Source of the DNA: Pelomyxa schiedti | Taxonomy: Eukaryota; Protista; Evosea | DNA length: 64,000 bases | Assembly: GCA_020536535.1 (NCBI GenBank) | Contig: JAHLWZ010000505.1 | Location: forward strand, 1 to 64,000 | Direction of reading: 5' to 3' | Shown: piece by piece, positions 38,511 to 54,647 of the stretch | Layout: every line of letters begins with the position of its first letter | Position numbering within the stretch: position 1 is the first letter of the stretch | Notes under the pieces: model-generated | The model's input: the letters and a program-made list of their open reading frames with translations, nothing else | Databases searched by the model: none | What the model was told of the DNA's origin: nothing | Made by a program: the position numbers and the translations under genes

Positions 38511-39665
38511 TTAGAAACTGTATAACTCAGAGGTTCTTGCCGCTGATAGACCTTTTGCAGGAGCCAGCTCCCAGAAGCTCTCGAAGGTAAAGTCCGGGCC
38601 ACAAGAGGCCGATTGGGAAGTACTGGGACTGGGGCTGGGGTGCAGGATCTGGTATTTGTGCAGTGCCACCATCACCGAGCACTTGAGCTGGTCCACAGAG
38701 ACCAGCTCCTTGCCGTCGTAGGCGGTGAGGTAGGTGGCCCTCGCCTGCTCCACTGGGATGCGGGCGATGCTGGCCGAGTCGAGGGCCGGCTGCACGAGGA
38801 GCCTGCGCCTCTTGACGTGGGTGACGAGCTGGGGGTCGGTGCGCCGCGCCTCCCCCTCCATGAGGGAGCTGTCTGCGCACGAGGGCAGGAACAGCGACGC
38901 GGCCCGCCAGCGCGGCGGGGGCGGGGGCGAGGGCGAGGGCGAGGGCGAGGGCCGGCGGGGAGGCCGCTGCCCCTCTTCCTCCTCCGCCTCCTCCGCGGCC
39001 CTGCGGGCGCTCCGTGCGCGCCACCAGGTCGAGCGCTCTGGTTCCTCGCTGCGGACCGCCTCGGCCGGCGGCTGGTCGGGGAGGGGCCTCATGGCGAAGT
39101 CGGGCTCCCACAGCCCGTAGGAGGGGTTGTAGGCTACGTCGAAGCACCAGGGCTCCCACGGCGCCGGCTGCCTGGGGTTGTACACCATGCTTGTGTCCAG
39201 CACCTTGTATCTTGCCGCCATTGCCTTCTCCCTAACGGCCATCCACAGAAGCCTCTTCCAGTCGCGGAACATTTCGGTGTCGCGTCCGTCCGCGCTGCCA
39301 TCTGCGCGGCGTTGGCGGGAATCCGCCGTCGCAAGCGGCGGCTTTGGGAATACCTGGCTCTGGATTGGGCCAAACCAGCATACTTGGTGCATTTGAGTCC
39401 AGAACCAGTGCTCGTCCTTTTGTATCCTGCACACAGAGGTCGGAAAAAGGGCGCGCGTGAGGTATTGCCACGGCCCTAGGCCCTCAGTGTGGAGGTGGTG
39501 GCGCCACCCATAATTTACATTGCAGCACTCCAGGCACGAGTTGAAGTCCAGAAAAGTGCACACTTTGTCGAAGAGGGTGGGGCCCAGGGCCAATAGGGGG
39601 TCGCGTCGCGGTGTGGCCTCGGCGTCGCGGGTAGCCGACGAAGAAGCACTTGTGGGATTGTCCAT
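38511..39665 (-). CDS. F-box protein
   Basis: DPLLALGPTLFDKVCTFLDFNSCLECCNVNYGWR F-box-like motif; 384-aa open frame. Confidence 0.7.
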   Translation of the reverse strand: MDNPTSASSSATRDAEATPRRDPLLALGPTLFDKVCTFLDFNSCLECCNVNYGWRHHLHTEGLGPWQYLTRALFPTSVCRIQKDEHWFWTQMHQVCWFGPIQSQVFPKPPLATADSRQRRADGSADGRDTEMFRDWKRLLWMAVREKAMAARYKVLDTSMVYNPRQPAPWEPWCFDVAYNPSYGLWEPDFAMRPLPDQPPAEAVRSEEPERSTWWRARSARRAAEEAEEEEGQRPPRRPSPSPSPSPPPPPRWRAASLFLPSCADSSLMEGEARRTDPQLVTHVKRRRLLVQPALDSASIARIPVEQARATYLTAYDGKELVSVDQLKCSVMVALHKYQILHPSPSPSTSQSASCGPDFTFESFWELAPAKGLSAARTSELYSF

Positions 39666-50121: not shown

Positions 50122-53100
50122 ATGGCAGGGAGTGATGGTGCTACGGAGGACGGTTGGAACTTCGAGATTGGGGAAGGTGAAGATCTGTCGCTCAACAGTG
50201 CGGCACAACCTGCTGTGTCGTCTCAAACTAGCAGCACAGAGACACAGAGTACTACTACAAGTGTTACGGCACAACCACCTGTTGTCACTCCTCCGGAAGA
50301 GAGTGCTACTGTGTTGCTTAGTGGGAGTGCGTCGGTCGAAAAAAGTGCACCTGCGGTCGCACCCAATAAATATTCGAGCAGTAGTAATGTGCAAAAGGAG
50401 GAGTCTGAGCAACCCTTTGAAATACTTGACTTCACTTGTGCCTCCCCATGGGAAAAATTTGTGTCTCAAATTGAAACCATTCTACGCTCTTGGAAAGGCA
50501 GTCCCGTTTCTGACTCAGTAAATGTTTTCAATTATCTTTCATGTGGACACTCAAACACCCTTTCCATAGTGTTCTCAATATGTTAAATGGAATGGCCGGT
50601 CCTTTTCCATTGAATACAGAATCAACTCGAAAGTGGCAACTCCAGGCACTTCATTAAGCACGCATATTAATAACATGGGACTCGATTTTTGCGCCAATCC
50701 TCTTCAACGCTGGTTTCTTTATTTTTTTCCGCTCCCTCATCCATTTGCTGATTGATATCAGGTTTGGAACACCCGAATTTTTACACGTCATTCCGCAAGA
50801 TAGCGCCAGTGTTAGCCCCTGTACCAATTCTCAACTTATAAGCAGCTTTTCTATCGCAGCAGCCAACTGCTCCTGGTACATTGGATACCGTATGATTGTA
50901 TCTAAGGTTCACAGGCACACACCCATTTTTGTACCCTATGGACCAGCGGCCATGTTCGACTATGTTGGAGTGTCCAGAGAAGAGTTTAAAACCGCACATT
51001 TTTCGTCACACACCATGCAGGCAGCACCTTACGCTCTTCGTTACCTTGATGGCCTACTTCCTTTCTATTTTTCGAAAATTGTACCAATTCCTTCCATTTG
51101 TTCTAGCGTCACAAATGCACTGCAGGGAGTATCGGGTACTCTTCCAGATAAGCTCCATATCCGTACTCTTTTTACATATCTACAAATTGGAGGACCACCC
51201 ACTCTTTGGCGCTTTCCAGGGTATTCTTCTTTCACTGAGTATTCATTTGACCCTTTCTAGTCACGCAGATGACCCAACAGCCACAACTACTGGTCAGCTG
51301 TCACCTCCTTTATGGGGTCCTATTGAAGATCCTGTCTCAAGTAACTATCTCGTATTTTTCGCGTTAATCCCTCGAAAGAGGCTAACATAACTCATCGGTA
51401 CTCTGAACATAAGACTTACGACTACAACTGGAGTGGCAACACACAAACCGTTTGTCTTGCTAATTTATTATTCCCTTCCTCATCTATGCCAGCTGTTACT
51501 GATAATTCTTCCATTACGGAATACACCTTGGACTCGGCTCAGCATTGCTATATAACTTGCAAATTTGATGACAGGTAGTTGCATTCTCACACTTTGTCCT
51601 AATTCTTTAAATCAGTCTGAGGTGCCCTTTATCACGAAGTGTCCGTGCCTTGATGCTTGGAGTCATTGATGTCACCCCATTTACCTCAATATCCCAAATA
51701 ATCAACAGTATGCACTTTTTTTTGTTGTTTTGTATCCCCGTCCCACATTCCACCAGCAACCAAGCAAACATCTGATAGCACTTTGAAAGCAATCTCTAGG
51801 TCTATATCCAATACATTTAACACAACTCATATTCCCATGAAACAAGTACGTTTTATCACCCCCAAACTCACTAATATAATGCAGGAACTAGAGGAAATAA
51901 TGTTGCGCGTCTTCTCGTCTACCGACAATTTCACTCCAGTCACATATAACCGACTGGATATTCAGAGTGCTCCTCCTTTGTCCCTTCCATCCATCCTTGT
52001 ACTGCACATGCTACGATTTCCTGGTTTAACAGGTTCAGTACTTTTTCCCATTGTTTTACTTGTCAATGCATGCCAGGTATGCTGCATATTTGGCGAGAAT
52101 TTGTGAAGCAATTAAGATATCACTGGGAGAGCAACCTTCCTCTTCCCAGTGTTACTCAGTCTCCAGAACTTGACTGTTGTCTCCTGTATCAAAAACTGCA
52201 AATGGTGCAGCCTTTTAGTGATAGGCAAATCACTAACATAGCATGGTTATAGTTAAATTACTGCCGGTGGTACTCCAACCATTTTGGCAATGATACAGCA
52301 AAAAGTAATGATGTAATCAATGGCTGGGATTTTGGTGCCGACCTGGAATCTCATGACACCCCTCGTCTTCTTCTCACCGGGGAACCAATTGTTGCTCCTG
52401 TCACGCAGGTGTGTTTATTTGGTCATTCAAGTATTTCACATAGCTGAAGGAAACTGGGGTTATGACAGAAGATATGATAACTGAGTATGAGTCTGTACTT
52501 TCAAGACTTGGAACATCAATGGAAGGGTCCCGTTTGCGCGCTAGAATGCAATCTGCTTCTCTCCTCTCTGGTAATATTAATAATGTCATCTTACACTGAC
52601 AACTTCTAGATATGCAAGCATTTAAGGCAGCCAATCCAGGTAGCATGCTGGAGGATTTTGTACGTTGGCATTCCCCGAATGATTGGATACCTGATGGTTC
52701 TGGCGGGGGCCATCTTAGCAGTAGGATGACTGGATCAACCCAAAACTTATGGCGGAGTGTATGGGAGGTTTATTCACATTTCTAGAGTTAAAATGTAACG
52801 CCTAGCAACAGGAAGCACAACCGCTACCAGTATGCAAACAACCACCTCTGTTTGATTGTAAGAAAGAAGCAGCGAAGGTACAACTGTCACATTGACACAC
52901 GTCTTACATTTTCCAGGTTCTGCATTACTTCGAAACAATTACTCCATCAGATCTTCTAAAGCAGTTTGTTATTCCTCAATTTTTGTTTTCCTAACCAATT
53001 TACGTTATTAGGCTCCTTGGAATAATTTTCACTACGTTACATCACTTTTTCACAACTCCACCAAGTCGTTCTCCCTTCGTAGTATACCTAGGTCTCACTT

Positions 53101-53677
53101 ACTCGTAGGTTTCGAGCTACAAGACGAATTAAATAGTGCACACGAAGCATACACTGGAAATTATACAGCAGTAAAGAACCGGGCAGCTGCATTTGAGGAT
53201 TCCGTAAGACGGCTTTGGAAATCCCCTACAAAGTAAGTAACCAGCATAACCGTAGCTTTAATTCTTTTGTTTAGTCCCTCCTCCGATTATGAGGCTATCT
53301 GGTTGGCTCTAGGCAGCCTGGAATTAACAGCAGCAAGAGCTGTCTCTTTAATTCATAAACTCGGTTCTCTTACGGCCGTTGTGGAGTCCCTACTACTAAC
53401 GAACAATTGTGCTCTCACATCCTCTTCTGAGAGCAGTGAAGTGATAACTAGCTTCAAGAACGTAGAAGGAAGTATGCCCCATCCACATCCTCGCAATTTT
53501 TCTCGTATTTAAAAAAACCACACAGAAATGCCAGACGCAGAACAGTACGAGTTCCTTGTGCGCTGTGAAACTCCAGGACACGTTCCGCACACAACATTGA
53601 TGCACCGTTTCTATGCCGCAGTGATACCGAGTACCTTTGCTCCAACAACGGTGAGAGTCGCCTACAGTTACCTCTGA
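50122..53677 (+). CDS. RAB3GAP1: Rab3 GTPase-activating protein catalytic subunit (multi-exon)
   Basis: DFTCASPWEKFVSQIE; LRARMQSASLLSDMQAFKAANPGSMLEDFVRWHSPNDW...HLSSRM; C-terminal HRFYA...VRVAYSYL*. Confidence 0.92.
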
Positions 53678-53784
53678 GTCTCAGGCTCTATTTTTGCGTC
53701 CTCGGGCCGCAGTTGCGATGACTTGATTTTTCACTAAACACAGTCTTTTTAATCAAAGTTCGTTCGCAATTTTATTTTTTTTCA

Positions 53785-54261
53785 CCAGAGAAATTTGCAG
53801 AAACGGAGTGAGGCACTGGCGGAGTGGTGTTCCGCAACACCACATCGTTTTCCGCGGTGTGGTGTGCGGGTACCCTAACCCTAAGTTCAGGGCTATGTGC
53901 CGCTCCAAAAGAGGGTTTTTCCCGACACTTCTTTTTTGTGCTGAGTGTCGGGAGCAAGCCAACCCCTCCCCTCTGTCCTTTTTTCCTCGTAAAAAAGGGT
54001 TGGCCTTCGCCGGAGCCCTGTGGTGTTTGCCTGCGTCGCGCGCGGCGTCTGCCCCCGTCCTGCGGGCGAGAGCGGCGGCAAGAGGGCCTGGGCGAGACTG
54101 CCCCCCGGATATTTCCTGGGGGGCATGAGAGGTGCGTCCTCGCTTCTCGCTCTTGGCTGTCTTGTTGTTGCTCTCGCTTGTGGGTGGGGACCTTGCACGG
54201 CCGCCGTGTGCGTCGCGGGCGGACGCCTCACGCCGCTTCTGCGTTTCTCTGGCCTTTTTTT
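53785..54261 (+). ncRNA. Candidate telomerase RNA (TR/TER), ~470 nt
   Basis: 5'/3' closing helix 53785-53814:54225-54252. Core-enclosing helix 53816-53824:54005-54013. Boundary hairpin 53831-53870. Template ACCCTAACCCTAA 53872-53884. Pseudoknot 53907-54004. Long G-U-rich arm 54025-54224 capped by a three-way junction with a P6.1-like hairpin at 54129-54141. Confidence 0.75.
53872..53884 (+). other. Putative telomerase template (two copies of CCCTAA; specifies TTAGGG)
   Basis: ACCCTAACCCTAA lies 1 nt downstream of a 16-bp hairpin and is single-stranded in the hand-derived fold. Confidence 0.7.
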
Positions 54262-54647
54262 AAACCTAAAAAGAAAAACGCTTCTCTACTGTTGGGTTTT
54301 TTCCTTCCAAAAGGGAGAACAAACACAGTCGTTGATGCCCCTCTACAAAGCCTCTTTGTGCGCGCTGTTCTGGTAAAAAAAAACAGAAAAAGACACGTTT
54401 CCGAAAGCACGTTTTGTCCTTTTGCGATAACAAAAAAACACTAGACTAGAACAAAAGACAGCGTTCCGGTCTGTTGAATATTTTATTGCATTTCGTGGCA
54501 GGTGTGGTAGGTGCCAACTTGCGCTTTTCTTTTTTTCTCATTGTGATCGATCTGATGGGCGTACGGCGAAAGGCTTTCCACGTTGGATCTGGGTGTCCCG
54601 CTGCGTTCGAAAAAAAAAACAAAAAAAACCCCACTTAAACAGACGTG

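What the first reader, a model, noticed from the sequence alone, without database searches (positions are those of the whole stretch)
53785..54261. Candidate amoebozoan telomerase RNA between RAB3GAP1 and the VPS9 gene
Seen in sequence, in the order shared by known telomerase RNA cores: (1) 5'/3' closing helix, CCAGAGAAA..GCAGAAACGGAGUGAGGC (53785-53814) with GCCUCACGCCGCUUCUGCGUUUCUCUGG (54225-54252), followed by a U7 run; (2) core-enclosing helix, CUGGCGGAG (53816-24) with CUUCGCCGG (54005-13); (3) a 16-bp hairpin (53831-70) ending 1 nt before the template; (4) template ACCCUAACCCUAA (53872-84), complementary to TTAGGG; (5) a pseudoknot; (6) a long arm ending in a CR4/5-like junction. Established: enclosing helix, boundary element, template, pseudoknot and a distal activating domain define TR in ciliates, fungi, vertebrates and plants. 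Inference: this is the organism's telomerase RNA. I am not aware of a described amoebozoan TR, which would make it important for TR evolution in Amorphea; that needs a literature and Rfam check.
Basis: partly seen in the sequence, partly recalled or inferred. Interest (0 to 1): 0.95.

Follow-up and report, generated by a model that had tools for sequence, protein, structure and literature searches.

The report
Probable first amoebozoan telomerase RNA
The amoeba Pelomyxa schiedti makes a separate 477-letter folded RNA that carries a template for the usual TTAGGG chromosome-end repeat and is built like a telomerase RNA; none was found described from the amoebae, the sister group of animals and fungi.

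Summary
The window is from Pelomyxa schiedti (Archamoebae). New evidence: a single-cell RNA library holds a contig covering exactly 53784-54260, with the template-switch adapter at 53784 on the + strand, separate from the upstream RAB3GAP1 mRNA contig (ends 53680). The RNA has a 13-nt TTAGGG template one base after a boundary hairpin, a predicted H-type pseudoknot and a P5/P6/P6.1-like junction. The genome encodes TERT with its RNA-binding and catalytic motifs. Verdict: very probably this organism's telomerase RNA (about 0.88). No amoebozoan TR was found in the searchable literature. Gaps: no telomere array is assembled, so TTAGGG ends are inferred; no homologue was found, so there is no covariation; the P6.1 loop lacks the conserved U; activity is untested. 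It lacks H/ACA, Sm and C/D signals and the CCCAYAA promoter element used by this amoeba's U2, U6 and MRP genes, so its biogenesis is open. A second library holds only a circular 420-nt form with RNase III-like end geometry (unexplained). The scan's index showed no earlier report of a telomerase RNA in this genome.

The parts
53784..54260 (+). Discrete non-coding RNA, about 477 nt, candidate telomerase RNA
   Evidence: RNA contig of run X3 covers exactly this span, template-switch adapter directly before 53784; no RNA contig over 53681-53783
53770..53783 (+). Pyrimidine tract ending in C before the +1 A; no CCCAYAA element upstream, even at 2 mismatches
   Evidence: sequence
53785..53814 (+). 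5' strand of the terminal helix (pairs with 54225-54252)
   Evidence: fold, pair probabilities 0.94-1.0 for the outer 23 pairs
53816..53824 (+). 5' strand of the core-enclosing helix (pairs with 54005-54013)
   Evidence: 9 pairs, p 0.99
53831..53870 (+). Template-adjacent hairpin, predicted template boundary element, ending 1 nt before the template
   Evidence: 17 pairs, z -5.3
53872..53884 (+). Template ACCCUAACCCUAA: 7-nt alignment plus 6-nt copying region for TTAGGG
   Evidence: sequence; expectation 8e-6 in an RNA of this length and composition
53910..54004 (+). Predicted H-type pseudoknot: stem 1 53910-15/53969-74, U5 loop 53916-20, inserted hairpin 53921-53953, stem 2 53958-65/53997-54004, A6 tract 53991-96
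   Evidence: best pseudoknot of the region; 1 of 1000 shuffles as stable, 0 of 1000 with U loop and A tract as well; no covariation available
54022..54227 (+). Long arm (about 72 pairs, 18 G-U, no A-C mismatch) carrying the distal junction
54099..54125 (+). P6-like hairpin
54126..54141 (+). Linker UGA and P6.1-like hairpin: 4-bp stem GAGG/CCUC, 5-nt loop UGCGU
   Evidence: p 0.96; compared with the NUNGN consensus of PMC3592445
54255..54261 (+). U7 run at the 3' end
   Evidence: RNA contig ends at 54260
53811..54230 (+). 420-nt circular or head-to-tail form seen in run X4; joint 54230 to 53811
   Evidence: A53811 pairs U54228, giving a 2-nt 3' overhang
50122..53677 (+). Upstream neighbour RAB3GAP1 (not part of the RNA); stop codon 106 nt before the RNA start
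   Evidence: spliced mRNA contig ends at 53680

Best explanation
This is the telomerase RNA of Pelomyxa schiedti. Shown: a single-copy gene makes a discrete + strand RNA of about 477 nt, and the genome encodes TERT. Inferred from the fold and from known telomerase mechanism: TERT binds the template core and the distal P6/P6.1-like junction; the chromosome 3' end pairs with the 3' half of the template (53878-84); TERT copies 6 nt towards A53872, where the hairpin ending at G53870 stops it; realignment repeats the cycle and adds TTAGGG units. The pseudoknot frees the template from a competing helix, the terminal helix and U tail protect the ends. Biogenesis is the least certain step: most likely Pol II from a non-snRNA promoter with trimming to the terminal helix and a U tail bound by an Lsm or La-type protein (about 45%), else Pol III with read-through of internal T5/T6 runs (about 30%) or release from a RAB3GAP1 read-through transcript (about 25%).
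For: Discrete transcript with ends matching the predicted terminal helix and + strand adapter, in libraries tailed in vitro with poly(A) polymerase so that untailed RNAs are captured (PMC10579272). Single copy. z -13.9; 18 G-U pairs and no A-C mismatch in the long arm point to selection on the + strand RNA. 13-nt template, expectation 8e-6; of 14 distinct genomic sites with two CCCTAA units examined it is by far the most structured (z -8.8, next -4.2). Element order matches published TR cores (PMC3592445, PMC8480181, PMC4993307). Pseudoknot beats 999 of 1000 shuffles. TERT on G000:C931: PF12009 over cut-off; exons hit solved TERT structures best; catalytic aspartates present in motifs A and C. 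RNase MRP has its own gene elsewhere. TTAGGG is the telomere repeat of the amoebozoan Acanthamoeba (PMC11995660); one TTAGGG run in this genome lies between two 20-bp direct repeats, as at a telomerase-healed break.
Against: No telomere array is assembled and TTAGGG runs are not enriched over the reversed control, so the organism's repeat is not shown. No homologue found, hence no covariation. P6.1-like loop lacks the conserved U at position 2. In the best pseudoknot the A tract is not paired in stem 2 as in human TR, so the U-A-U triple register is unclear. Expression rests on one contig in each of two libraries of one study, without read-level data.
Confidence: 0.88

Rival explanations
1. 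A different, undescribed structured non-coding RNA (for example a scaffold or a Dicer/Drosha substrate giving small RNAs from the long arm) that carries the telomeric 13-mer by chance or uses it to base-pair with telomeric DNA without templating.
For: 25-bp and 14-bp uninterrupted helices in the arm; RNase III-like geometry of the X4 joint; loop U missing; telomere repeat not shown.
Against: Chance of the 13-mer is 8e-6; it sits single-stranded next to a hairpin inside an enclosing helix, upstream of a pseudoknot; TERT needs an RNA and no other structured template-bearing locus was seen among the sites examined; full-length 477-nt form is present.
Confidence: 0.08
2. A structured 3' UTR element or stable processing remnant of RAB3GAP1 read-through transcripts, without telomerase function.
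For: Same strand, starts 106 nt after the stop codon; no snRNA-type promoter.
Against: mRNA contig ends at 53680, nothing bridges 53681-53783, and run X4 holds the RNA without the mRNA; does not explain the template. (Origin from a 3' UTR is compatible with the best explanation, as in Ustilago, PMC9564094.)
Confidence: 0.02
3. A decayed MITE or foldback DNA element that happens to be transcribed.
For: Terminal inverted repeat of about 28 bp; T runs on both flanks; the genome has MITE-like families.
Against: Single copy at E up to 1; no target-site duplication; G-U against A-C asymmetry 18:0; multi-branched, not a simple foldback; exact transcript ends.
Confidence: 0.01
4. A diverged RNase P, RNase MRP or SRP RNA.
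For: Similar size to this amoeba's 493-nt MRP RNA, paired ends, U tail.
Against: No Rfam match at E up to 10; CR-V motif found in the true MRP RNA but not here, no SRP helix 8 motif; MRP has its own gene. RNase P and SRP genes were not searched genome-wide.
Confidence: 0.01

Closest known systems
Filamentous-fungal and fission-yeast telomerase RNA core (Neurospora crassa, Schizosaccharomyces pombe; PMC3592445)
   Same: Core-enclosing helix, template-adjacent boundary helix, pseudoknot with an inserted helix, P5/P6/P6.1 junction with a 4-bp stem, 5-nt loop, loop G at position 4 and an A before P6.1; U-rich 3' end as in S. pombe
   Different: 477 nt instead of 1.2-2 kb; loop position 2 is G, not U; extra hairpin sits in the U-rich upstream loop; no Sm site and no 5' splice site after the 3' end
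Animal telomerase RNA (vertebrate and basal metazoan; PMC8480181)
   Same: Size range, TTAGGG template of 1.5-2 repeats, P1.1-type boundary hairpin as in invertebrates, pseudoknot, CR4/5-like junction
   Different: No box H/ACA domain; 5' and 3' ends pair in one long terminal helix; ends in a U run
Ciliate and plant (Diaphoretickes) Pol III telomerase RNAs (PMC12133305)
   Same: 3' U run, enclosing helix, template-adjacent helix, pseudoknot
   Different: No type-3 upstream element although U2, U6 and MRP genes of this genome have one; internal T5, T6, T6 runs; longer, with a three-way junction
Ustilago maydis TER (PMC9564094)
   Same: Lies just downstream of a protein-coding gene on the same strand
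   Different: No joined transcript seen here; 5' end carries one extra G after the adapter, compatible with a cap; no Sm-like site

Membership tests
Telomerase RNA (TR/TER/TERC) | Template of 1.5-2 copies complementary to the organism's telomere repeat | tested here: inconclusive
   13-nt perfect match to TTAGGG; the P. schiedti repeat itself is not assembled; Acanthamoeba uses TTAGGG
Telomerase RNA (TR/TER/TERC) | Discrete non-coding transcript from the template strand | tested here: met
   contig 53784-54260 with + strand adapter; second library 53811-54230
Telomerase RNA (TR/TER/TERC) | TERT encoded in the same genome | tested here: met
   (exon by exon)
Telomerase RNA (TR/TER/TERC) | Template boundary element 5' of the template | tested here: met
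   predicted 17-bp hairpin ending 1 nt before the template, p 0.88-0.99; function not assayed
Telomerase RNA (TR/TER/TERC) | Core-enclosing helix | tested here: met
   predicted, 9 pairs, p 0.99
Telomerase RNA (TR/TER/TERC) | Pseudoknot with U-rich loop forming U-A-U triples | tested here: inconclusive
   H-type pseudoknot with U5 loop and A6 tract, 0 of 1000 shuffles; stems 3 nt apart, triple register unclear, no covariation
Telomerase RNA (TR/TER/TERC) | Binds TERT and directs the synthesised repeat | not testable with these tools
   needs reconstitution or immunoprecipitation
Telomerase RNA (TR/TER/TERC) | Structure conserved with covariation among relatives | not testable with these tools
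   no homologue reachable
Vertebrate/fungal CR4/5 domain | Three-way junction with 4-bp P6.1 stem, 5-nt loop and an A between P6 and P6.1 | tested here: met
   against PMC3592445 and PMC4993307
Vertebrate/fungal CR4/5 domain | L6.1 loop consensus NUNGN | tested here: not met
   loop is UGCGU: G4 present, U2 absent
Animal H/ACA-type TR | 3' hairpin-H box-hairpin-ACA domain | tested here: not met
   no ACA or H box in the 3' half
Yeast Sm-type TR | Sm site near the 3' end or spliceosomal 3' cleavage signal | tested here: not met
   no Sm pattern; no GT after the U run
Plant/ciliate Pol III type-3 TR | Upstream element shared with U6/MRP genes | tested here: not met
   CCCAYAA about 60 nt upstream of U2, U6 and MRP but not of this gene
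Trypanosome C/D-type TR | Box C and terminal box D | tested here: not met
   no box C
RNase MRP / RNase P RNA | CR-V motif and Rfam model match | tested here: not met
   MRP gene elsewhere
MITE | Many copies with target-site duplications | tested here: not met

The most novel reading that the evidence does not exclude
It is the first amoebozoan telomerase RNA, its P6/P6.1 junction is a true homologue of the animal-fungal CR4/5 (dating that domain to the ancestor of Amorphea), and it matures by a route unlike any described TR: no H/ACA, Sm, C/D or type-3 promoter, ends sealed by a terminal helix, and an RNase III-type cut of that helix giving a circular 420-nt form that keeps every functional domain.
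Probability: 0.15. Interest if true: 0.93.

Novelty: new variant of a known kind. Interest (0 to 1): 0.82.

Why it matters
Telomerase RNAs are known from animals, fungi, trypanosomes, ciliates and plants and their allies, but none was found described for Amoebozoa, the sister group of animals plus fungi (four paper searches; a 2019 paper states that the Dictyostelium RNA is unknown). An amoebozoan TR is the outgroup needed to decide whether the pseudoknot triple helix and the CR4/5 P6.1 hairpin predate opisthokonts and which biogenesis route is ancestral. It also gives a seed for finding TRs in Mastigamoeba, Acanthamoeba, Physarum and Dictyostelium, and shows that a free-living relative of the telomerase-less Entamoeba kept the enzyme.

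Tried and rejected
Rfam at E up to 5 and 10: only chance hits (Pseudomon-1 27 bits against a 50-bit cut-off). Homologue hunts: template-plus-flank pattern in JGI metagenomes gave 16 unrelated telomere-like or random stretches, none alike beyond the pattern; P6.1 pattern in IMG/VR gave 2 bare 17-mer matches, not followed; synteny through RAB3GAP1 relatives failed, the nearest are about 30% identical with other neighbours or no flank. Relaxed template-pseudoknot patterns in the own genome found no paralogue. Telomere arrays: none at contig ends for TTAGGG or other TDNGGG hexamers; 5- and 7-mer repeats not searched. ORFs over the element are short and without support. A second low-energy stretch at 38638-39114 is GC-rich coding DNA (z -1.4). 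The TERT gene was examined exon by exon by reference; the exons were not joined into a protein model, so an intact reading frame is not shown. One search was a mistaken empty call. No covariance model was built because there is only one sequence.

Full report
Source. The assembly has 52,367,397 bases in 5337 contigs, matching the published Pelomyxa schiedti assembly of 52.4 Mb in 5337 scaffolds (PMC8887013); the upstream protein is named in NCBI as the P. schiedti Rab3 GAP catalytic subunit. The organism is a free-living anaerobic archamoeba (Amoebozoa).

Observation. The stretch folds at -282 kcal/mol against -195 +/- 6 for shuffles (z -13.9) and is the strongest outlier of the window after GC correction. 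The + strand folds 54 kcal/mol better than the - strand, and the long arm has 18 G-U pairs and no A-C mismatch, the pattern expected from selection on a + strand RNA and not from a DNA inverted repeat. The locus is single-copy, has no target-site duplication and matches no Rfam family.

Expression. Two single-cell RNA libraries of the same study hold the element. By year and description they fit a SmartSeq2 protocol with in vitro poly(A) tailing (PMC10579272), which captures untailed RNAs. In run X3 one 491-nt contig covers 53784-54260, with GTACATGGGG directly before 53784 on the + strand. From my own knowledge this is the end of the SmartSeq2 template-switch oligo plus one extra G, so it marks a 5' end and the strand; the extra G is compatible with a cap but one contig cannot prove it. 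The spliced RAB3GAP1 mRNA contig stops at 53680, three bases after its stop codon, and no RNA contig covers 53681-53783. The transcript ends thus coincide with the terminal helix predicted from sequence alone. DNA carry-over cannot explain the adapter, the sharp ends or the spliced neighbour. These are contigs, not reads, so levels and end heterogeneity are not known.

Anatomy. Inside a 9-bp enclosing helix lie a 17-bp hairpin, one U, the 13-nt template and a pseudoknot region. A 13-nt match to the CCCUAA register has an expectation of 8e-6 in an RNA of this length and composition. Genome-wide such 12-mers are no commoner than the reversed control, but among 14 distinct sites examined only this one is strongly structured. 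The best H-type pseudoknot pairs AGAGGG 53910-15 with 53969-74 and GCCAACCC 53958-65 with 53997-54004, with U5 opening the first loop and A6 closing the second; 1 of 1000 shuffles gave one as stable and none also had the U loop and A tract. Its first stem (-13.0 stacking, by subtraction from the -31.5 total) slightly outweighs the helix that would otherwise bury the template (-11.8). How the U loop forms triples is not clear: the A tract can pair with U6 53979-84 instead, and several registers are possible. The long arm ends in a three-way junction with an 11-bp P6-like hairpin, a UGA linker and a 4-bp stem with a 5-nt loop. This is the geometry of vertebrate and fungal CR4/5, including the A before P6.1 and the loop G, but the loop reads UGCGU where the consensus is NUNGN (PMC3592445; PMC4993307).

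Partner enzyme. A TERT gene lies on G000:C931 (PF12009 above cut-off). Read exon by exon it shows the T motif, motifs 1/2, A, B', C with its two aspartates and E; five exons each have solved TERT structures as best hits (E 2e-7 to 0.19), one of them the QFP region that contacts CR4/5 in vertebrates. The exons were not joined, so frame integrity is not shown.

Telomere repeat. No array is assembled; TTAGGG occurs as internal runs of 3-4 units, not enriched over the control. The genome came from amplified single cells, where loss of ends is expected (inference). Indirect support: Acanthamoeba uses TTAGGG (PMC11995660), and one internal run sits between two 20-bp direct repeats, which resembles a break healed by telomerase (inference, one case). 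The Mastigamoeba genome paper does not give its repeat. This is the main gap.

Biogenesis. U2, U6 and RNase MRP genes of this genome all carry CCCAYAA about 60 nt upstream, the position of the Dictyostelium DUSE element (PMC7919456). The candidate has nothing within two mismatches of it. U6 and MRP genes end in T8-T11, whereas the candidate ends in T7 and contains T5, T6 and T6 internally, which argues against plain Pol III transcription. There is no H/ACA domain, Sm site, box C or downstream splice donor. Pol II from a pyrimidine-rich start with trimming to the helix is my preferred reading; Pol III and release from a RAB3GAP1 read-through transcript, as in Ustilago (PMC9564094), remain open.

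Unexplained. Run X4 holds only a 450-nt contig that goes round 53811-54230. The joint has no splice signal and no microhomology. A53811 pairs with U54228, so the two ends form a 2-nt 3' overhang in the terminal helix, the signature of an RNase III-type cut. It could be a real circle, a cut by host or endosymbiont enzyme during lysis, or a reverse-transcriptase jump; it is one contig in one run.

Comparison and novelty. It works like a telomerase RNA by every structural test that could be run, and it fails the subtype tests for animal H/ACA, yeast Sm, trypanosome C/D and plant/ciliate type-3 TRs. It is closest in core design to filamentous-fungal and invertebrate TRs. Searches of the paper library found no amoebozoan TR; a 2025 review mentions Amoebozoa only for telomerase loss in Entamoeba (PMC12133305) and a 2019 paper says the Dictyostelium RNA is unknown (PMC6592521). 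Papers outside the library could not be checked. No homologue was reachable, so covariation is missing.

Verdict. Observation confirmed, interpretation supported: telomerase RNA about 0.88. New variant of a known kind; interest 0.82 because it supplies the missing outgroup to animal and fungal TRs and is directly testable by reconstitution.

Noticed in passing
window 54423-54490: Decayed copy of a roughly 90-bp MITE-like family with terminal inverted repeats beginning TGGCTGAATAAAA; its 32-mer has 203 matches in the genome against 0 for the reversed control, some copies head to head.
   Followed up: partly
G000, U2 loci L024-L029, U6 loci L030-L035, MRP locus L074: U2 (33 hits), U6 (21 hits) and the single RNase MRP gene carry CCCAYAA about 60 nt upstream, i.e. 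a DUSE-like promoter element outside Dictyostelia, which PMC7919456 did not expect. Usable to find further P. schiedti non-coding RNAs.
   Followed up: partly
L074 1501-1993 (G000:C811:110023-110515, -): RNase MRP RNA is unusually long, 493 nt against a 266-position model.
   Followed up: no
L006 about 1480-1540 (G000:C1393): A TTAGGG run between two 20-bp direct repeats, resembling telomerase-mediated repair of a staggered break.
   Followed up: partly
window 51845-53680: Ten GT-AG introns of 39-54 nt in RAB3GAP1 confirmed by RNA contigs; the mRNA contig ends 3 nt after the stop codon, suggesting a very short 3' UTR.
   Followed up: no
L014 3400-7550 and 8197-8302 (G000:C931): The TERT gene has many short exons and a U6 gene lies just upstream on the same strand.
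   Followed up: partly
window 53971-53984 and 54247-54260: The 14 nt ending the RNA are repeated at 93% identity inside the pseudoknot region; chance or an alternative end signal.
   Followed up: no
window 54216: C read as A in the X3 RNA contig only, breaking a G-C pair; amplification error or a modified base.
   Followed up: no
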